The position numbers were made by a program, and so were the translations under genes. From the IMG/VR virus record IMGVR_UViG_3300027782_000025, positions 1 to 64,000 of that record: a stretch of 64,000 bases of DNA; one strand, written 5' to 3'. The number at the start of each line of letters is the position of its first letter. Position 1 is the first letter of the stretch. Under the pieces are notes generated by a model that was not told the DNA's origin, made no database searches, and worked only from the letters and a program-made list of their open reading frames with translations. Shown piece after piece: positions 1 to 27,851 of the stretch.

Positions 1-63
1 CCATATGTATACCTCAAAAAAGAACGAACGGTGCATTAAACTGAAAGTAAATTGAACCAACGT

Positions 64-155
64 GCGGAAGGGTATATTCGATCGGGAGAGCGACCTGGGG
101 ACCCTACCCGGGTCCCCCCATATACCCTTCCGCCAATACTTAGTATATTCCCCAT
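64..155 (-). ncRNA. Candidate structured small RNA (three-way junction)
   Basis: Perfect 13-bp inverted repeat 64-76/121-133 encloses two hairpins (80-95, 97-117). It lies just downstream of a leftward promoter and has no ORF. A G-U pair forms only on the minus strand. Confidence 0.45.
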
Positions 156-160
156 ACATA

Positions 161-189
161 TATGTAACAGGGGGGATATCTCGTGTCAA
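161..189 (-). promoter_or_regulatory. Early-type promoter TTGACA-N17-TACATA (extended TG)
   Basis: Minus strand reads TTGACA cgagatatcccccctgt TACATA. Confidence 0.75.
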
Positions 190-245
190 TAGTATATGTC
201 TCGTGGGTCGTCAGTATGTCATTTGAGCACCTTCCTTTCTACCCT

Positions 246-306
246 ACTGTAACAGACCATAGCCCAGCCTGCAATTATTGCAGCTGACCACCCGCTCTGC
301 TACAGG
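246..306. promoter_or_regulatory. Back-to-back divergent promoter pair
   Basis: Palindromic core CTGCAA-TTA-TTGCAG (269-283) gives TTGCAG-N17-TACAGG on + and TTGCAG-N17-TACAGT on -. Confidence 0.7.
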
Positions 307-394
307 GAGAGGCGAGGGTGGTAGGGACCGGTGGTCCGGCCGCTCGGCTGGTTCGGTCCTGATGCCCTTGCGACACACACTGGAGGTTCTGATT

Positions 395-589
395 ATGAGC
401 GATTCTTCTTCCGCTTCTTCTGTTACAGGTGACTTGCGTAGCGAGGCTGATTTGCCTGTGGGCATCGAGGTCACCAAGAACACGAAGGGCTACAATTGGA
501 CGATCAAGATCAAGGCTGTGGATGAGCTGGGTCTTGTAGATCGGCTGGAGGAGCTGGATCGCCAGCTTCGGGTGCGGTTCAAGGACTAA
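395..589 (+). CDS. Hypothetical early protein (64 aa)
   Basis: ATG 395 after ACACACACTGGAGG leader and promoter. Confidence 0.75.
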   Translation: MSDSSSASSVTGDLRSEADLPVGIEVTKNTKGYNWTIKIKAVDELGLVDRLEELDRQLRVRFKD

Positions 590-599
590 GCGGGCCTCT

Positions 600-644
600 G
601 GCCCTGAGCCTTGGTGGCTTGGGGCCTCTTTTCTTCTTTTTTTT
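600..644 (+). terminator. Intrinsic terminator
   Basis: 11-bp stem GGCCCTGAGCC/GGCTTGGGGCC followed by a long T tract. Confidence 0.8.
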
Positions 645-819
645 GGGAGGGTCTTATAATGGTTGAGTTGTACTTGTGGTGTGGTTTGGTGGCTGTGACT
701 TATGGTGCGGTTGTTACGCTGATTAATTCTAAGCCTTATTAGGCGTTGCGTTTGGAGTGGGTGTTTGTTACAGTTTTTTGTGGTTTTGGTTTTTATTTCT
801 TACACTGGAGGTTTTTATT

Positions 820-1017
820 ATGTGTGATTCATGTTGTCGGGATGTTGAAGCTCGGATTTTGTTTGATGATGAGGGTGTTGTGGCTGGGGTTTTTTGTGAT
901 GATTGCTCGCCGTCGCTTGAGGCGGCTTATGATTTGGAGCTTGCTCCGGTGATGGTTTCTGGGCGTGGGCGGATCTCGAAACGGGCTGCTGCTCGGAAGA
1001 GGGATCGGGCTGCGTAG
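820..1017 (+). CDS. Small Cys-containing protein with basic tail
   Basis: SD GGAGG, ATG 820; CxxC twice. Confidence 0.7.
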   Translation: MCDSCCRDVEARILFDDEGVVAGVFCDDCSPSLEAAYDLELAPVMVSGRGRISKRAAARKRDRAA

Positions 1018-1112
1018 GGTATCGGTTTCCTGCGAGGAAAGTGGGGTTGCTGGGTGACCCCCCGTTTGTTACAGGCTTTTGGGTTTTAAACACACTTTTT
1101 AGGAGAGACGAA

Positions 1113-1292
1113 ATGATGATGTTTGCAATGTTTGGCGTTTCGGTATTATTGGGCTGTGCTGGCTATGTCGCTGCTATCAATGCAAGCCAGATCGACATAA
1201 GCCTCGCCTTTTTCATCTCCTTCTTGGCCACAGCTGGACAAATCGTGACCGCCTTTATGGCTGGACTCTGCGTGGACCCTCCACGCAACTAG
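1113..1292 (+). CDS. Small membrane protein (2 TM)
   Basis: AGGAGAG SD; two hydrophobic segments. Confidence 0.7.
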   Translation: MMMFAMFGVSVLLGCAGYVAAINASQIDISLAFFISFLATAGQIVTAFMAGLCVDPPRN

Positions 1293-1301
1293 ATTTCAGG
1301 T

Positions 1302-1354
1302 GATCGGTCTCCTGTGTGGGAGAGGGTGAGGAGATTGCTCCGCCCTCTCTTTTT
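1302..1354 (+). terminator. Repeated GATCGGTCTCCTGTGTGGG + hairpin terminator, copy 1
   Basis: Stem GAGAGGG/CCCTCTC, then T tract; homologous to 1879, 3941, 6897. Confidence 0.7.
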
Positions 1355-1424
1355 AATATTGACAAAATCGTTACACTCTGCTACAGGATTTTGGGTTCGA
1401 AACACACTTTTTAGGAGAGTAAGA

Positions 1425-1844
1425 ATGTTGAGCAAAGATTTCATTACAGCTGGTAACGCGATCTTCACCGTCGAAAACAACAAGGGTGAGCACTTCACCT
1501 TCAAGGTCGAAAAGAAGAAGGCGGAGAAGAACTATCCGGACGCTTGGTTCGTCCGAGCCATGGTCGGGACAGATAACACCGAGCACTACGCTTACCTCGG
1601 ACTCCTCGATGCTGAATACGGCAAAGTAAAGATGACCAGAGCTTCGAAATTCACCGAAGACCAAACCCAAACCAAGGTGGTTCGCTGGGCGTTGGACAAA
1701 ATCTGGACGAACGGAAGCCTGCCTGAGGGCTACAAGATCCGCCACAATGGGCACTGCAGCCGTTGCAAGCGGGTCTTGACCAATCCCGAATCTCTCGATA
1801 CCGGAATCGGGCCAGAGTGCGCCAAGATTCTGGCGGGAGAATAA
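1425..1844 (+). CDS. DUF6011-like zinc-finger protein
   Basis: C-terminal CSRCKRVLTNPESLDTGIGPEC matches the remembered CxxCxRxLTxxxSxxxGIGPxC pattern; SD AGGAGAG. Confidence 0.7.
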   Translation: MLSKDFITAGNAIFTVENNKGEHFTFKVEKKKAEKNYPDAWFVRAMVGTDNTEHYAYLGLLDAEYGKVKMTRASKFTEDQTQTKVVRWALDKIWTNGSLPEGYKIRHNGHCSRCKRVLTNPESLDTGIGPECAKILAGE

Positions 1845-1878
1845 AACACGCCCTGAGGGCTTTCCTCAGGGCTTCAAG

Positions 1879-1931
1879 TCGGTCTCCTGTGTGGGAACGG
1901 GCTGGTGGTTAAATCACCGGCCCGTTCTTTT
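1879..1931 (+). terminator. Repeated terminator element, copy 2
   Basis: TCGGTCTCCTGTGTGGG then a different 13-bp stem and T tract. Confidence 0.7.
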
Positions 1932-2048
1932 ATATCCATGGGATTTACAGCGGAGCCCCCGCTTGTTACAGAGAAGAGGCGGGGGGAGGCGGAGGCGACC
2001 AGTGTGGTGGCCGCGCTCCCCCCGCGAGACACACACGGAGAGTTTGCT

Positions 2049-2363
2049 ATGGGTAAGGTAATGAGGTCGGATGTGGTGAAGTTCAAGTCTTGGCTCAGTG
2101 AGCGCGTCGCGTGCCCTGAGGCCTCCGGTCACTTCGAGATCTGGGAATATGAGCCCTTCTGCGAAGTCCGGGACGAGTGGGACGACTTCGGCGAGCGAAA
2201 GCTCGTGTGGCAGATGAAGAGCTCGGACTACCTCTGCGAGGACGAGATCGACCCGAAGGCCAAGGATATCGCGCGTCTCCTGAAGGCCGTCAAAGACGAG
2301 TTCAAGCTGGTGGCGGCGAAGGACGACGAGCACACGTTCTACGCGGCTCGTCTCCCCCGATAA
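2049..2363 (+). CDS. Hypothetical, probable paralog of 5612-6058
   Basis: ACACACACGGAG leader; shares DVxxFKxWL..C and DD...VWQ motifs. Confidence 0.75.
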   Translation: MGKVMRSDVVKFKSWLSERVACPEASGHFEIWEYEPFCEVRDEWDDFGERKLVWQMKSSDYLCEDEIDPKAKDIARLLKAVKDEFKLVAAKDDEHTFYAARLPR

Positions 2364-2464
2364 TCCCTGGGGGTTGCGCCAGGGCTCCGGCTCTGGCGCT
2401 CTTCCCTTTTGTTTGTTACAGTGGTTTGCGGTTTTTTCCTTTTTTTCACACTGGAGGGTTTGCT

Positions 2465-2716
2465 ATGAGGACTTCTGAACTGGTTGACTTGTCTTTTGCT
2501 GAAATGGCTGATAAGCTTGTTGTGAAGTTTGGCCCTGCGCGGCCGAGCGAGAAGCTGATGAAGAAGGCGATCGTCTGGAGCGGGACTCACTTGAACGGTC
2601 TGTTCCTTGCGCACTATCACTTGAACGTGAAGTGCTTTGAGGACTCGGTGATGTGGCGCGAGCTGCTGCTCGAGGAGCTCAGGGCTGCCGCGGACAGGCG
2701 GTACGGGCAGGGATAA
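2465..2716 (+). CDS. Hypothetical early protein
   Basis: SD GGAGG after promoter 2414. Confidence 0.7.
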   Translation: MRTSELVDLSFAEMADKLVVKFGPARPSEKLMKKAIVWSGTHLNGLFLAHYHLNVKCFEDSVMWRELLLEELRAAADRRYGQG

Positions 2717-2823
2717 TACGGTTTCCAGAGAGGAAAACGCGGGGTTGCCGGTGGCGGCCCCGCTTGTTACAGAGAAAAGTGGAAGCCACAGTGGCGACCA
2801 AGAAACACACAAAGGAGAGAAAA

Positions 2824-3258
2824 ATGGCAGAAATGAATCTTGACCTTTTCCGTTTTAACAGCACTGAAGCCAGTTTGTCTTTTAGTTCGTTTCACGAGAA
2901 AAACTGCGAATTCGGTGGTGCAGAGTCTGGTGTAGGTGAGAATCGATGGTCTTATAACATCGAAAAAGACGGTTCGACAAATTACAAAGATGACTTTTTT
3001 GATAATGATCGATGCGGCGGAGGACCAGATGAATATAGTGACTCTTTAAGTGAACCTAGTCCAGTTCCTACAAAAGAAGATGCGATAAAAGAAATAGAGA
3101 GTTTAATCGAAGGCAAAAGAAAGACATTGGCCGATTTGGAAGCCTTCTTAACAGCTTTCCAGACTGCCCCAGGACCTTACACAGACTTGGGTGACTACTG
3201 GAAGTTCGAAGCTAGCGAGGACGAGGACGAGGACGAAGACGAAGACGAAGACGAATAG
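2824..3258 (+). CDS. Very acidic protein with (ED)n tail
   Basis: SD AGGAGAG; GARGAC hexamer repeat encodes EDEDEDEDEDEDE. Confidence 0.75.
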   Translation: MAEMNLDLFRFNSTEASLSFSSFHEKNCEFGGAESGVGENRWSYNIEKDGSTNYKDDFFDNDRCGGGPDEYSDSLSEPSPVPTKEDAIKEIESLIEGKRKTLADLEAFLTAFQTAPGPYTDLGDYWKFEASEDEDEDEDEDEDE

Positions 3259-3688: not shown

Positions 3689-3931
3689 ATGACGACAAAA
3701 GAATGCCAGACAGTGAGACGACAAAGGGTCGAGTTCCAAATCGCCTTGGCCGGTAATTGTGACCAATGGGTTCCAGCCTGTGGCGGGACCGAGTTGCCTT
3801 TCCGATCAAGGTCTGGACGATCTTTGCACTACATGTACAACCCCCAGCAAAAACGCCACGCTTACCTTGACACCGCGACGGACGTGATTCTCACTGATCA
3901 AGAGGCGGACGCGTTCATGGAGCGTGTTTAA
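3689..3931 (+). CDS. Hypothetical phage protein (WVPACGGTE motif)
   Basis: SD AAGGAGAG, promoter 3621-3649. Confidence 0.75.
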   Translation: MTTKECQTVRRQRVEFQIALAGNCDQWVPACGGTELPFRSRSGRSLHYMYNPQQKRHAYLDTATDVILTDQEADAFMERV

Positions 3932-3940
3932 TTTTTAGGT

Positions 3941-3992
3941 GATCGGTCTCCTGTGTGGGGGAGGGTGAGGAGTTTGCTCCGCCCTCCCTTTT
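3941..3992 (+). terminator. Repeated terminator element, copy 3
   Basis: Stem GGGAGGG/CCCTCCC, T tract. Confidence 0.7.
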
Positions 3993-6882: not shown

Positions 6883-6896
6883 ACAATTTTTAGGGG

Positions 6897-6949
6897 ATCG
6901 GTCTCCTGTGTGGGGGAAGGTGAGGAGTTTGCTCCGCCTTCCCTTTTTT
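6897..6949 (+). terminator. Repeated terminator element, copy 4
   Basis: Stem GGGAAGG/CCTTCCC (compensatory change vs copy 3), T tract. Confidence 0.7.
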
Positions 6950-10527: not shown

Positions 10528-10599
10528 TGGGACGGGTGGGGATCGAACCCACTTCCTTAGTGTTATGAGCACTCTGCTCGGCCGTTGAGCTTCCGTCCC
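10528..10599 (-). tRNA. tRNA with CAT anticodon (elongator Met or Ile2), atypical, no encoded CCA
   Basis: Acceptor GGGACGG/CCGTCCC, D stem GCTC/GAGC, anticodon loop CTCATAA, T arm GTGGG-TTCGATC-CCCAC, discriminator A. Confidence 0.85.
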
Positions 10600-11191: not shown

Positions 11192-11269
11192 TAGTTCTTC
11201 TCCTTGAAAAAGTGTTAAATCTCCGAGACCCTGTAACAAAATGGGGTTGCTGCGTCAACCCCTTAGGAA

Positions 11270-11793: not shown

Positions 11794-11871
11794 TTCCTAG
11801 GGGTTGCGTGAGCGACCCCCGTCTGTTACAAGGTTTTGGGTTCGAAACACACTTTCTTAAGGAGAGAAAAG

Positions 11872-12297
11872 ATGAGCTATGAATCGATGAGTGAAGCGGA
11901 GAAGTTAAAAATCTGGATCGCTGGCGTGAATGGAGAGAATAAGATGACCATCAGTGATTTTGACTATGAGCCGGGCGGGAAGTGGGACTGCGGGCATTTG
12001 AATTTCACTGCCACTACGCCTTTTGGCGACTTAGAATGGGAGGAAGTTATCCCAGGGCCACGCCATAGCGGCGACTCAGCGTCAGTTACAGTCACGTTGG
12101 ACGGGGATGACGTATCAGATTTATTCTGTGACCTAGACTTTGAAGCGCCACGCGAGGAAGGGCGCTGGGCAGACGAATTTAGAGAGGACGACGGGGTTTT
12201 GGATCAGCTCTTTGTCTACCTTGAGGCCATCAAAGATCAGCTGGTGGCGTTTAAAAAGGAGAAAAACGAGAGTCCTAGCGACGATAGAGACGAGTAA
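11872..12297 (+). CDS. Acidic hypothetical protein
   Basis: SD AAGGAGAG. Confidence 0.75.
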   Translation: MSYESMSEAEKLKIWIAGVNGENKMTISDFDYEPGGKWDCGHLNFTATTPFGDLEWEEVIPGPRHSGDSASVTVTLDGDDVSDLFCDLDFEAPREEGRWADEFREDDGVLDQLFVYLEAIKDQLVAFKKEKNESPSDDRDE

Positions 12298-13925: not shown

Positions 13926-15053
13926 ATGATGAATACTGTAGTAATGCAATCGGCCAGCCTCTACTTCAAAGACAATGTAAGTGACAAAGTCTACAACGTC
14001 ACCCTCGAAGAAGCAGATGGTGGATACATCGTCAACTGCTCATGGGGTAGACGAGGCGGAGCCTTACAAAGTGCCACGCAAACCAAATCCCCAGTATCCA
14101 TCGACAAAGCCATCGCCATCTACCATAAAAAACTATCCGAAAAAACCTCTAAAGGATACATGCCCACCTCCGACACCGGCAGAACACTCGGCAACTCCAT
14201 AACCGTGCCCGACACCGATAAACCATTCGAACCAATCTGTAACCTACTAAACCCTATAAACGAATACCAACTCAAACAACTGCTAATAGACGACTCTTGG
14301 ATCATGCAAGAAAAAATGGACGGCGTGCGCATGATCCTCACGCGCAAAGGCGACAGCATCACCGCAGTCAGCCGAACAGGACGCGAAGCCACAATCCCCC
14401 AAGAAGTACACGACACCCTCATCAAGACCTCAGTCCAGAACTACATCATCGACGGAGAACTAGTCGGCGACGTCTACCACGTATTCGACCTCCTAAGACT
14501 CCAAGCAATGGACTTCGCGGCCAAGAATACCTTCGAAGAAAGATATGAAGCACTCGTCGAACTACTCAACGGCATCGACGACACCAACGTCAAAGTCGTG
14601 AAGACCCACTCAGGCTACGACAAAACCCAGGCCTTCGAAGACCTTAAATCCGCCGAAGGCGTGGTGTTCAAGCACAAAAACGCGTTCTATAAGGCTGGTA
14701 GACCATCAAGCGGTGGCGGATACTTGAAATACAAGTTCTACAAAAGCTGCAGCGCTCTGGTCACCGGGATAAATGACAAAAGGTCTATAGCCCTGAGTTT
14801 AATCGAAGACATGCCAGAGCACGGTAGCGAATATGTCGTCGGTAGAAGGCTCATATCAGTAGGGAACTGCACCATCCCCGTGAATTATGACTTCCCACAA
14901 AATGGTGACATCGTTGAGATTAAATACCTCTATGCTCGGAAGCCTAGCAACGCGCTCTACCAGCCGAGCTACCTTGGTAAAAGGACGGACATCCAGCTTA
15001 AGGATGTCCTATTGTCGCAGCTCATCTATAAGGTGGGTGAGGAAGAGGAATAG
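13926..15053 (+). CDS. WGR domain + ATP-dependent DNA ligase
   Basis: SDKVY...WGRRG...K..EK..KGY (WGR); QEKMDGVR (KxDG), DGEL, FDLL, EGVVFK motifs; C-terminal OB fold. Confidence 0.85.
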   Translation: MMNTVVMQSASLYFKDNVSDKVYNVTLEEADGGYIVNCSWGRRGGALQSATQTKSPVSIDKAIAIYHKKLSEKTSKGYMPTSDTGRTLGNSITVPDTDKPFEPICNLLNPINEYQLKQLLIDDSWIMQEKMDGVRMILTRKGDSITAVSRTGREATIPQEVHDTLIKTSVQNYIIDGELVGDVYHVFDLLRLQAMDFAAKNTFEERYEALVELLNGIDDTNVKVVKTHSGYDKTQAFEDLKSAEGVVFKHKNAFYKAGRPSSGGGYLKYKFYKSCSALVTGINDKRSIALSLIEDMPEHGSEYVVGRRLISVGNCTIPVNYDFPQNGDIVEIKYLYARKPSNALYQPSYLGKRTDIQLKDVLLSQLIYKVGEEEE

Positions 15054-25227: not shown

Positions 25228-25386
25228 TCCTTAACCTCCTCAACACCCTGTAACAAACCAAAAAACGATTGCAATCCCCGGATTCCCTCATAATACATCG
25301 AACGTATTAAATAGGAAGCGAAACATTTACAAACCATATAGACCTTGCTACAGACTGTCGTGGTTACACTAACAAAGGAGGTTCAG

Positions 25387-26571
25387 ATGTTATCGGACAG
25401 TATCATCAGCAAGTTCAAGGTCGACCCGAGAGACTACCAGCGAAGGATCGTTCGGCAAGCCCTCGACATGTTCACCGGCAAGTACATCAGCCGAAGCGGA
25501 GCCAGCAACCCGCCATTCAAAAGCGTGATGGTTGAATCACCCACAGGCTCAGGCAAGACAGTCATCGGATTCCTCACCGCCAGCGCCCTCAGCGAAGAGC
25601 TAGGCATCGACCCCGATGACCTCGCAGTCGCTTGGATCGCCATGCGAAGGAACCTGCTCACCCAAGCCGAAAGAGAGAACATCTCCAAAGGCTTTAATAT
25701 CAAGAATATCCACTTCACCAGCATGTTTAACAAGCTCCCCGATGAGCTAGTTGCCCTCAAGAAAGCTGGCAAGAAGATCCTCTTCGTGGTTGACGAGTGC
25801 CATCACGACACCGCCAGCTCGATGGTCCACCTGCATAACTTGCTCGTGCCCGACTTTGTCCTCGGCCTAAGCGCCACCCCTTACAGGACCGACAAAGCGA
25901 ACTTGTGCTTCGAGAAGGTGATCAAGGACTGTGGGATCCACCAGCTAATCGCTGCAGGATACCTAAGCCCCTACGACCACTTCACGATCACAGATTGGAA
26001 GCCAGAGACAGTCGTCGAGCGGTTCACAGCTGAGCCAGAACGATGGGGCAAAAGCGTGATGTTCTTCAAGAATCTCGAAGAATGCTTCGTCACCAAGGCC
26101 CTACTCGACGCTCAAGGATACAAGTCCGAGGTCGTCACAGGTGCCAGCGATGCCGAGCAGCAGATCGATGATTTCCAAGAAGGAAAGGTGAATATCCTCA
26201 TCAACTGCATGAAGCTCACCGAGGGCTTCGATTGCCCCGACATCAAGACAGTGTGGGTCCGTGACTCAGGCAAAGGCACCACGACACAGATGGCTGGGCG
26301 CGTCTTCCGCATCCATCCCGACCTACCTGTGAAGCAGGTGGTGCAGTCCAAGGTCACCCGATGGCCCTGCCTCAAGACCGCCATGCCGAAGATCCAGTAC
26401 AGCTACGAGAATGGCGAGTGGATGAGTTTGACCATCAATCCCAAGATCGATGAGATGACCCACAACTCCCGACGAGCCATCGCTTCGGCCGTGGTCGACA
26501 TCCCAGTTTACATTCTGAATAAGCAGGCGAAAGGCAGAAGAAAGCCAAGTGCTACGGAGCGTGTAATATAG
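25387..26571 (+). CDS. Superfamily 2 (DExH) helicase
   Basis: SPTGSGKT, VVDECHH, GLSATP, LTEGFD, QMAGRVFR. Confidence 0.9.
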   Translation: MLSDSIISKFKVDPRDYQRRIVRQALDMFTGKYISRSGASNPPFKSVMVESPTGSGKTVIGFLTASALSEELGIDPDDLAVAWIAMRRNLLTQAERENISKGFNIKNIHFTSMFNKLPDELVALKKAGKKILFVVDECHHDTASSMVHLHNLLVPDFVLGLSATPYRTDKANLCFEKVIKDCGIHQLIAAGYLSPYDHFTITDWKPETVVERFTAEPERWGKSVMFFKNLEECFVTKALLDAQGYKSEVVTGASDAEQQIDDFQEGKVNILINCMKLTEGFDCPDIKTVWVRDSGKGTTTQMAGRVFRIHPDLPVKQVVQSKVTRWPCLKTAMPKIQYSYENGEWMSLTINPKIDEMTHNSRRAIASAVVDIPVYILNKQAKGRRKPSATERVI

Positions 26572-26687: not shown

Positions 26688-27851
26688 ATGAAGATTGATT
26701 ACCGAAATGCGTCGATTAAAGATCTGAAATGCGTGTCTACTGTGGACAAGCACCGCAACAAGGTCACCGGCATCGAGGTCGATGGCGAAGTGATCAAGCC
26801 GACCGAACGCTTCTGGACGAGCGTCTGCTCACGATTCGGCTTTAACCCCAGCGTGTTCAAATACTTCGAGCACGAAGAAGTGTTCACCCGCATCTCCGAG
26901 AAGCAGCATGGTGGCCAGCTCGGCCTCACGATCGAGCGGAACGATGATGGCCTCAACAGGCTCCTAGGTGTGTCCAGCCCATCCAAGCCAGTCGCTCGCC
27001 ACGAGCAGCTGATCAGCACGCTTGACAAGTTCAAGGCAGAAGGTATCACCTACTCCAATGGGGTGATCTCTAGCCAGCACACCCCACGTGTGAACAACGG
27101 CTTCATCACCGCTGGCGATGCCTTCTCCGCCAAGTTCTTCCTTAACACCCCGATCGACGGCTATGGCGCCCCATCGATCTACCTCGGGCTTCTCCGCCAA
27201 GTGTGTGCAAATGGCATGGTCGCCCTCAGCAAAGCATTCCGCTCCGACCTCTCCCTCGGGAAGGGCGAAGACAACGTGATGCCAGCGATCATCCGAGCAC
27301 TCGACAGCTTCAACAACGACGAAGGCTACGCTGCACTCCAGCAGCGCGTCGAATCGTCCACAAAGTCTTGGGCCTCGATGTACGAAGCGAACAGCCTTCA
27401 CCAGCTGCTCTACAAGACCTTCGCACAGAACAGCCTCAAGTCCATCGAGACCGACGTGCCCCCCGAAGGCACCAAGCTCCACGAGCTGTTCCCCTCAGGA
27501 GTTGAACTCGAGTCCTATCGCAAGATCGGCAACCCGCTGTTCAAGGCCTTCCACACGATGACCGGAGACGCAGGAATGCTCTACGGCCTGTCGAATCTCG
27601 ACGCTCTCTCCAGCAAGAGACAGCGAGCATTGCCAGTGAAGTGCTCAGCTTACGATCTCATCAACTTCGCCACAGAAGTCGCCACCCACTATGCAAATGG
27701 TGATGGTGCCCGCAAGCTGAACGGCTGGGTTGGTGATATGATCGCCAACGAGTTCGACATGGAGAACACGATGGACGAGAACAAGGACTTCACCGACACC
27801 TTCCTCAGATCACAGATGAACATGATCACAGACAAGGTCGGAGCGAACTAA
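26688..27851 (+). CDS. DUF932-like phage protein
   Basis: LLRQVCANGM motif; own promoter 26614-26641. Confidence 0.6.
   Translation: MKIDYRNASIKDLKCVSTVDKHRNKVTGIEVDGEVIKPTERFWTSVCSRFGFNPSVFKYFEHEEVFTRISEKQHGGQLGLTIERNDDGLNRLLGVSSPSKPVARHEQLISTLDKFKAEGITYSNGVISSQHTPRVNNGFITAGDAFSAKFFLNTPIDGYGAPSIYLGLLRQVCANGMVALSKAFRSDLSLGKGEDNVMPAIIRALDSFNNDEGYAALQQRVESSTKSWASMYEANSLHQLLYKTFAQNSLKSIETDVPPEGTKLHELFPSGVELESYRKIGNPLFKAFHTMTGDAGMLYGLSNLDALSSKRQRALPVKCSAYDLINFATEVATHYANGDGARKLNGWVGDMIANEFDMENTMDENKDFTDTFLRSQMNMITDKVGAN

What the first reader, a model, noticed from the sequence alone, without database searches (positions are those of the whole stretch)
64..189. Promoter-driven structured sRNA candidate exposing an anti-Shine-Dalgarno loop
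Seen: a leftward TTGACA-N17-TACATA promoter fires into ORF-free DNA. The RNA folds as a perfect 13-bp closing stem (GCGGAAGGGUAUA/UAUACCCUUCCGC) holding an 8-bp hairpin (loop GGGUA) and a 5-bp hairpin with loop CUCUCC. That 5-bp stem has G-U on the minus strand but A-C on the plus strand, so strand choice agrees with the promoter. CUCUCC is complementary to GGAGAG, the SD of several early genes here. Established: C-rich loops in sRNAs such as staphylococcal RNAIII and RsaE pair with SD sequences. Inference: a phage sRNA repressing early or host translation.
Basis: partly seen in the sequence, partly recalled or inferred. Interest (0 to 1): 0.7.

Follow-up and report, generated by a model that had tools for sequence, protein, structure and literature searches.

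The report
Structured leader RNA at phage early-region border
The hairpin cluster is a real, strand-specific RNA structure made from an early phage promoter. It is the folded front part of a longer non-coding transcript in an uncultured lake jumbo phage, not a self-contained small RNA, and its proposed job of blocking ribosome-binding sites is unsupported.

Summary
Window 64-133 folds into a 70-nt three-way junction: a 14-bp perfect closing stem, an 8-bp hairpin and a 5-bp hairpin with loop CUCUCC on the minus strand. The leftward TTGACA-N17-TACATA site (189-161) belongs to a promoter family with 30 copies in the first 32 kb, against 0.4 expected by chance.

Related lake-metagenome contigs carry five transitions in the stems. 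All five give G·U on the minus strand and A·C on the plus strand. Contigs from four metatranscriptome runs cover the element. It is therefore a minus-strand RNA, not a DNA hairpin or a genome end; DNA contigs read 3.6-9.6 kb further left.

The sRNA reading is only partly supported:
- No terminator follows the structure.
- RNA contigs start upstream, near a second leftward promoter at 246-274, and run at least 210 nt past the structure through conserved non-coding DNA that holds direct-repeat arrays.
- The two more divergent lineages keep the promoter and the outer stem. They lose the stable fold and the exposed CU-rich loop.
- No target complementarity beyond a generic 6-nt match to Shine-Dalgarno sequences was found.

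Best reading: the cis-acting, structured 5' domain of an early non-coding or leader transcript. It has no Rfam family and is known only from this one phage lineage. Interest is modest.

The parts
64..133 (-). 70-nt three-way-junction RNA domain. Closing stem 64-77/120-133; hairpin 97-104/110-117 (loop 105-109); hairpin 81-85/92-96 (loop 86-91, CUCUCC in the RNA).
   Evidence: Stem substitutions in relatives preserve pairing on the minus strand only.
135..149 (-). Small 5'-proximal hairpin (AAUAU-ACUAA-GUAUU) between the predicted P1 start and the junction. The core ACUAAGUAUUGG is invariant in all three lineages.
161..189 (-). Leftward promoter P1: -35 TTGACA at 189-184, 17-nt spacer ending in TGT, -10 TACATA at 166-161. 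The start is predicted near 154. The -10 lies inside the palindrome TACATATATGTA, which is flanked by CCCC/GGGG.
   Evidence: family enrichment. Conserved in types A, B and C, while spacer bases vary in strain X6.
246..274 (-). Second leftward promoter P2 of the same family, with a predicted start near 239. It stands back to back with the rightward promoter of the first early gene.
   Evidence: RNA-library contigs end at 217 and 228, just inside this predicted start, and depth is zero over 251-300 in run X5.
278..306 (+). Rightward promoter of the first early gene (ORF 395-589). It marks the divergent-promoter node.
   Evidence: RNA contigs of run X5 begin at 326 and 352.
40..63 (-). Conserved 3' flank of the junction (ACGUUGGUUCAAU...). 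It resembles the head of the direct-repeat array further left.
1..39 (-). Strain-variable spacer. It holds a GAGG-N7-ATG that opens a non-conserved 52-55-aa ORF running off the window, and a U-run that is absent in some strains.
   Evidence: (X21 variant).

Best explanation
The element is the folded 5' domain of an early, leftward, non-coding (leader-type) transcript. It is not a stand-alone sRNA gene.

Two tandem early-class promoters, P2 (246-274) and P1 (161-189), sit on the left border of a roughly 32-kb, GC-rich early-gene island and fire outward. The nascent minus-strand RNA first forms a small hairpin and then the very stable 70-nt three-way junction. Transcription then continues, with no terminator, through at least 210 nt of conserved non-coding sequence that holds arrays of 9-10-bp direct repeats and an AT-rich stretch.

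I take the junction to act in cis. It would be a compact co-transcriptional fold near the 5' end that stabilises or insulates the transcript, or modifies the elongating polymerase in the manner of HK022 put, so that early transcription reaches the repeat region.

Shown: the structure, the strand, promoter-family membership and conservation, presence in RNA libraries, read-through, and the lack of a conserved ORF.

Inferred: the start sites, and the cis role itself.
For: - Fold and uniqueness.
- Strand: the five stem transitions (positions 70, 72, 100, 128, 129) all give G·U on the minus strand and A·C on the plus strand. In locus L003 the minus strand folds at -36.0 kcal/mol (z -3.3) and the plus strand at -20.9 (z -0.3).
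- Covariation: the 7th pair of the closing stem changes G-C to A-U in type B, and 86.9% of alignment cells are paired against 32-57% when the partners are slid.
- Promoters: family enrichment. P1 hexamers are kept in all lineages while the spacer varies. No family promoter occurs in the 9.6 kb to the left, so P1 and P2 are the outward-facing border promoters.
- RNA: contigs from four metatranscriptome runs of three studies cover the element, at -150..228, 54-217, 7-256 and 1-118. A depth gap falls exactly over the divergent promoters in X5.
- No terminator after the structure.
- No conserved ORF for about 480 nt. The candidate ORF is broken in L002 and L004, and L016 and L018 differ by a 1-nt indel within it.
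- The DNA is continuous to the left.
Against: - The Logan RNA contigs carry no strand and no end information. The direction of transcription and the start sites rest on promoter prediction and on the wobble pattern. That pattern gives p of about 0.03, or 0.06 if positions 128 and 129 are one event.
- In types B and C the homologous segment is no more stable than shuffled sequence (z -0.2 and -1.2). A mechanism that depends strictly on this fold is therefore not conserved across the wider lineage.
- One stem change (position 73 in L008) breaks a pair.
- The leftward genes lack family promoters and differ between strains. It is unclear what, if anything, the transcript is a leader for.
- No experiment bears on stability or antitermination.
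Confidence: 0.45

Rival explanations
1. Trans-acting early sRNA. The RNA, or a fragment processed from the longer transcript, uses the exposed CUCUCC loop to pair with GGAGAG Shine-Dalgarno sequences and damp translation of early or host mRNAs.
For: - The loop is unpaired in the dominant fold.
- The loop is invariant in all type-A strains that were found without using it as bait.
- About 8 early genes carry GGAGAG as their SD.
- In run X21 the 54-217 stretch is one of only two pieces of the first 3 kb that were recovered, which hints at a stable RNA.
Against: - There is no terminator, and RNA contigs run on in both directions.
- The loop is not kept exposed in types B and C.
- SDs do not co-vary with the loop.
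- No complementarity of 8 nt or more above chance.
- Any CU-rich loop matches any SD.
Confidence: 0.15
2. Origin-activating or primer transcript. The tandem promoters drive RNA into an adjacent replication origin made of direct-repeat iterons plus an AT-rich unwinding stretch. The junction is a folding domain of that RNA. This would work like the T7 primary origin, the T4 R-loop origins or ColE1 RNA II.
For: - Just left of the window lie two clusters of 3-5 direct repeats (TGGTCTWA in RNA sense) with a 9-10-bp period, followed by an AT-rich 100 bp.
- The repeat array is unique in the 274-kb contig.
- GC skew changes sign sharply at this locus.
- The block is conserved while the genes to its left are swapped between strains.
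- The RNA is G-rich.
Against: - The skew switch coincides with divergent transcription, which would produce it by itself.
- No initiator protein, DnaA box or antisense control RNA was identified.
- The repeats could equally be operator or partition sites.
- No replication data exist.
Confidence: 0.17
3. No selected RNA function. The perfect palindrome is a recent, lineage-specific sequence feature inside a DNA-level control region of promoters and operators, and it is transcribed only incidentally.
For: - Types B and C lack a fold better than shuffles.
- The substitution rate in paired positions (6 of 54) is no lower than in unpaired ones (2 of 16).
- The flanks are more conserved than the interior.
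Against: - All five transitions (5 of 5) are wobble-compatible on one strand only.
- There is a compensatory A-U pair in type B.
- A nested 14 + 8 + 5-bp architecture with z -5.7 is unlikely by chance.
Confidence: 0.15
4. DNA-level hairpin: a cruciform, a packaging site or a physical genome end.
For: - The element lies 63 nt from the contig end.
- Four independent assemblies stop within 5 nt of window position 1.
Against: - Seven fetched loci (L002, L003, L004, L005, L008, L009, L013) read 1.4-9.6 kb further left, and the 3,773-nt contigs of runs X2 and X3 read 3.6 kb further left.
- The contig breaks coincide with a strain-variable, A-rich spacer.
- Most strains carry A·C mismatches on the plus strand, so a two-strand cruciform is not preserved.
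Confidence: 0.03

Closest known systems
HK022 put RNAs (putL, putR): factor-independent, cis-acting antiterminator RNAs
   Same: About 70 nt. Two hairpins separated by a single unpaired base. Placed just downstream of an early sigma-70-type promoter. Put acts on the polymerase that made it; its features are taken from PMC9378689 and PMC8632103. The invariant AAGUAU near the predicted 5' end fits the weak NANNAT pause motif described for putL.
   Different: Here the two hairpins are short and are enclosed by a 14-bp closing stem, giving a three-way junction rather than a V of two long stems. There is no sequence similarity. No terminator was identified downstream. The fold is not conserved in types B and C. 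Nothing was tested functionally.
P1/P7 c4 antisense RNA (Rfam C4 family) and P4 CI RNA
   Same: A small structured RNA encoded at the head of an operon leader, with loops proposed to pair with a ribosome-binding site. The c4 role in the c4-icd-ant operon is taken from PMC8198154. The interior is variable and the scaffold is conserved.
   Different: No Rfam match even at E up to 10. No complementary target of 8 nt or more in the downstream leader or the early transcripts. No evidence of processing.
C-rich-loop sRNAs of Staphylococcus (RNAIII, RsaE)
   Same: A pyrimidine-rich hairpin loop complementary to SD sequences.
   Different: This comparison rests on general knowledge and was not tested here. 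Those RNAs are discrete terminated transcripts and usually have several UCCC loops. Here there is one CUCUCC loop, no terminator, and no conservation of the loop across lineages.
Promoter-plus-origin modules (T7 primary origin with tandem promoters; T4 R-loop origins; ColE1 RNA II; P4 ori/crr octamer repeats)
   Same: Tandem promoters point into direct-repeat arrays and an AT-rich stretch, at a skew switch.
   Different: The properties of the known systems are recalled from general knowledge. Neither a replication function nor an initiator was shown here.

Membership tests
Any described RNA family (Rfam 15), including C4 antisense RNA, ribozymes, riboswitches and Y-RNA-like | Covariance-model match at or near the family's gathering score | tested here: not met
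   No hit overlaps the element in the window, in L005, or in types B and C at E up to 5-10.
tRNA / tmRNA | Cloverleaf recognised by ARAGORN | tested here: not met
   The only tRNA found is tRNA-Met at 10528-10599.
Autonomous bacterial or phage sRNA gene | Own promoter | tested here: met
   P1 at 161-189 is a member of a family enriched about 77-fold in the early island and is conserved in three lineages. No start site was mapped.
Autonomous bacterial or phage sRNA gene | Defined 3' end: an intrinsic terminator, or a discrete processed species | tested here: not met
   No terminator-like site was found on either strand. RNA contigs continue at least 210 nt past the structure. A processed species cannot be excluded with contig-level data.
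Anti-SD regulatory RNA (c4-, RNAIII- or RsaE-like) | A conserved, exposed pyrimidine loop with target complementarity that is specific or co-varies | tested here: not met
   The loop is exposed only in type A. SDs do not co-vary with it. Complementarity is not above shuffles.
Conserved structured RNA (general) | Base pairs maintained by compensatory or wobble changes in relatives, on one strand | tested here: inconclusive
   Within type A, 5 of 6 stem changes are wobble-preserving on the minus strand only. One double change (G-C to A-U) occurs in type B. The inner hairpins are rearranged in types B and C, and their folds are not better than shuffles. Only about 10 distinct sequences are available, all closely related.
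put-like processive antiterminator | Suppresses downstream terminators in cis and binds the RNA polymerase beta' zinc-binding domain | not testable with these tools
   Only position and size could be compared.
Intrinsic terminator | A GC-rich hairpin immediately followed by a U-tract | tested here: not met
   The closing stem is followed by ACGUUGGUUCAAU. The nearest U-run lies about 45 nt away and is absent in L002 and L004.
Physical genome terminus or packaging hairpin | The DNA ends at or near the element | tested here: not met
   Several assemblies are continuous across the site.

The most novel reading that the evidence does not exclude
An early-promoter-driven structured RNA of a jumbo phage that either reprograms the host polymerase without protein factors (put-like), or licenses or primes replication at the adjacent, unique direct-repeat and AT-rich locus. 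In either case it would mark the control node between the GC-rich early-gene island and the rest of the genome.
Probability: 0.15. Interest if true: 0.65.

Novelty: new member of a known kind. Interest (0 to 1): 0.35.

Why it matters
If the cis role is right, this is a compact and easily testable RNA module at the point where early transcription leaves the early-gene island of an uncultured freshwater jumbo phage of at least 275 kb. Together with the neighbouring repeat arrays it pinpoints a candidate control or origin region in a genome that has almost no annotated functions. As it stands, the element is lineage-restricted, its function is unknown, and the attractive anti-Shine-Dalgarno idea has no specific support. 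Its present value lies mainly in annotation: a real non-coding RNA domain, a defined early-promoter motif, and the clarification that this is not a genome end.

Tried and rejected
- Rfam scans of the window, of L005 and of types B and C gave nothing at the element.
- ARAGORN found no tRNA-like gene there.
- blastn of 1-3000 against the phage records gave no match.
- Exact and gapped DNA patterns found only near-identical strains: viral contigs, metagenome contigs and bacterial genomes (none).
- Homologues of the first early protein are all at 81% identity or more, so no distant relatives were available for covariation.
- A covariance model found a single copy in the 274-kb record. Relatives cannot be drawn for a virus record.
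- The left flank of related contigs is not present elsewhere in the record, so the contig is not a closed circle.
- The RNAalifold consensus over all three types was dominated by misaligned interiors and was not used.
- A search for a c4-like target found no complementarity of 8 nt or more above chance.
- The leftward 52-55-aa ORF was rejected as coding.
- A rightward antisense promoter was rejected on reading the sequence: TTGAAC-N15-TATATT at 52-78 has too short a spacer and is not listed.
- G-quadruplex potential of the G-runs was noted but is not conserved in type B.
- One literature query failed on syntax.

Full report
**Context.** The window is the first 64 kb of a 274,625-bp IMG/VR virus record. 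The record is linear and CheckV rates it about 70% complete. It comes from freshwater or lake metagenomes. The finding lies 63 nt from the contig's left end, so the first question was whether that end is real.

**Observation.**
- Positions 64-77 pair perfectly with 120-133. This 14-bp stem is the only perfect interrupted inverted repeat of 13 bp or more in the window.
- Inside it lie an 8-bp hairpin (97-104/110-117) and a 5-bp hairpin (81-85/92-96). Pair 82-95 of the latter is G·U on the minus strand and A·C on the plus strand.
- As minus-strand RNA the 70-mer folds at -45.6 kcal/mol. Its z-score is -5.7, and 78% of the ensemble is in this one structure.
- The domain is unchanged inside a 390-nt transcript model. 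That longer RNA as a whole is not unusually structured, z = -0.13.

**Promoter.**
- On the minus strand, TTGACA (189-184), a 17-nt spacer ending in TGT, and TACATA (166-161) match the motif TTGnnn-N13-15-TG[TC]TACA.
- That motif occurs 30 times in the first 32 kb against 0.39 in shuffles. It is at chance level in the other 243 kb, 5 against 4.1.
- The copies sit in front of the small early ORFs.
- A second leftward copy (P2, 246-274) stands back to back with the rightward promoter of the first early gene (278-306).
- No copy occurs in the 9.6 kb to the left of the window in related contigs. P1 and P2 are therefore the outward-facing promoters at the border of the early island.
- The island is about 50% GC, inside a 31-40% GC genome. 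GC skew flips sign at this locus.

**Not a genome end.**
- Looking up the exact product of the first early gene returned contigs from other samples. Together with the loci from the pattern scans, these continue 1.4-9.6 kb further left.
- DNA runs X2 and X3 each hold a 3,773-nt contig that reaches 3,580 nt beyond window position 1.
- Four assemblies do stop within 5 nt of position 1. The sequence just there is an A-rich spacer that varies in length and differs between strains, which is a normal cause of contig breaks.

**Strand and conservation.** Three lineages were recovered:
- Type A is window-like and has seven distinct 70-nt versions.
- Type B is L016-L023; its first early protein is 81% identical to the window's.
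- Type C is L024.

Within type A the stems carry six substitutions. Five are transitions, at positions 70, 72, 100, 128 and 129. Every one gives G·U on the minus strand and A·C on the plus strand. The sixth, at position 73 in L008, breaks a pair.

In L003 the minus strand still folds at -36.0 kcal/mol (z -3.3). Its plus strand falls to -20.9 (z -0.3). A transition in a Watson-Crick pair favours one strand or the other with equal chance. Five of five therefore gives p of about 0.03, or 0.06 if positions 128 and 129 were one event.

Type B keeps the outer seven pairs with one double change, G-C to A-U. On the ten-sequence alignment 86.9% of cells pair, against 32-57% when the partners are slid.

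The interiors of types B and C are rearranged, and their folds are no better than shuffles (z -0.2 and -1.2). Structural conservation is therefore good at population level and only partial beyond it. P1, the small 5' hairpin core and the 3' flank ACGUUGGUU are the most conserved parts.

**RNA evidence.** Contigs from four metatranscriptome runs of three studies cover the element:
- X5: from 150 nt left of the window to position 228.
- X21: 54-217 at 100% identity. This is one of only two pieces recovered from the first 3 kb.
- X25: 7-256.
- X23: 1-118 and 97-718.

In X5 the depth is zero over 251-300, where the divergent promoters lie. It resumes at 326 and 352 for the first early gene. This fits predicted starts near 239 (P2, leftward) and 313 (rightward).

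These are unstranded assemblies. They show that the sequence is present in RNA libraries and give minimum extents. They do not show ends or direction.

**What lies downstream.**
- No terminator-like site follows the structure on either strand.
- The 52-55-aa ORF that opens at window position 5 is stopped after 9 codons in L002 and L004. L016 and L018 differ by a 1-nt indel inside it. Its SD and start region is strain-variable.
- The next roughly 330 nt are conserved and non-coding.
- They hold two clusters of 3-5 direct repeats (TGGTCTWA in RNA sense) with a 9-10-bp period and a copy number that differs between strains. An AT-rich stretch of about 100 bp follows.
- This array occurs nowhere else in the record.
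- Further left, the genes differ between strains: a DUF3293-like gene, or glycosyltransferases.

**The anti-SD idea.**
- GGAGAG is indeed the SD of about eight early genes. The general SD, however, is GGAG(G/A), so any CU-rich loop would match it.
- The loop is exposed only in type A. In type B it lies half inside a stem, and in type C it pairs with the G-run.
- Type B SDs are mostly GGAGG and do not follow its loop.
- Complementary runs of 8 nt or more between the element and 32 kb of early transcripts number 22, against 28±8 for shuffled elements. There are none in the leftward leader.

**Comparison with known systems.**
- No Rfam family matches.
- In position and size the element recalls HK022 put RNA: about 70 nt, two stem-loops, just downstream of an early promoter, acting in cis (PMC9378689, PMC8632103). 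Its 14-bp closing stem makes it a three-way junction instead, and nothing was tested.
- It also recalls P1 c4, an antisense RNA encoded at the head of the operon it controls (PMC8198154). No target was found for it.
- The promoter, repeats and AT-rich layout recalls phage and plasmid origins. That comparison rests on general knowledge.

**Verdict.** The element is a real minus-strand RNA structure driven by conserved early promoters. It is best read as the structured 5' domain of a longer early non-coding or leader transcript that acts in cis (confidence 0.45). The rivals are an origin-activating transcript (0.17), a trans-acting anti-SD sRNA (0.15), no selected function (0.15) and a DNA-level hairpin (0.03). 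It is a new RNA motif of a familiar kind, known from a single uncultured phage lineage. Interest is 0.35.

Noticed in passing
L005 9433-9545 (173 to 61 nt left of window position 1); also in L002, L003, L004, L008, L009 and L016: Two clusters of 3-5 direct repeats (TWAGACCA on the plus strand) with a 9-10-bp period. Copy number differs between strains. They are separated by a GC-rich spacer and followed by an AT-rich stretch of about 100 bp. The array is unique in the 274-kb record. It could be an origin, an operator array or a partition site.
   Followed up: partly
window 395 to about 32000, against 32000-64000 and the left flank in L002, L005 and L009: A roughly 32-kb island of small early genes at about 50% GC is embedded in a 31-40% GC jumbo-phage genome. 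All copies of the TTGnnn-N14-TG[TC]TACA promoter motif lie in it. GC skew flips from about -0.3 to +0.3 at its left border. Several independent assemblies span the junction, so it is not a chimera.
   Followed up: partly
window 1 (±5 nt): Four independent metagenome assemblies end within 5 nt of the same position: two contigs of about 275 kb from one sample, plus contigs of 7.9 kb and 3.0 kb. Other contigs read through. The site is an A-rich, strain-variable spacer.
   Followed up: partly
window 151-176: The -10 element of P1 lies inside the palindrome TACATATATGTA, which is flanked by CCCC and GGGG. It is largely conserved in types B and C. It may be an operator for a dimeric regulator, or a hairpin in P2-derived RNA.
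   Followed up: no
window 10528-10599 (-) and 11230-11258 (-): A phage tRNA-Met gene lies downstream of one of the few leftward copies of the early-promoter motif.
   Followed up: no
window 1291-1353, 3930-3992, 6885-6947 and the 5' UTR repeats (e.g. 1067-1119, 1379-1431, 11824-11876): The early region is built from reused intergenic modules: a 63-nt terminator-like unit at 90-95% identity, and a shared 5' UTR (GGGTTCGAAACACAC...AGGAGAG) in front of many unrelated small ORFs.
   Followed up: no
G000 274326-274625 (right end of the record, outside the window): The record ends in a run of CCAACA/CCAACG hexamer repeats, which is probably why the assembly stopped there. The left-flank sequences of related contigs are not found anywhere in the record.
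   Followed up: partly
window 13926-15053 (+): This ORF matches the ATP-dependent DNA ligase and RNA ligase domains and has an N-terminal WGR domain. A DEAD/ResIII helicase lies at 25345-26571, and a DUF932 protein at 26688-27851.
   Followed up: no
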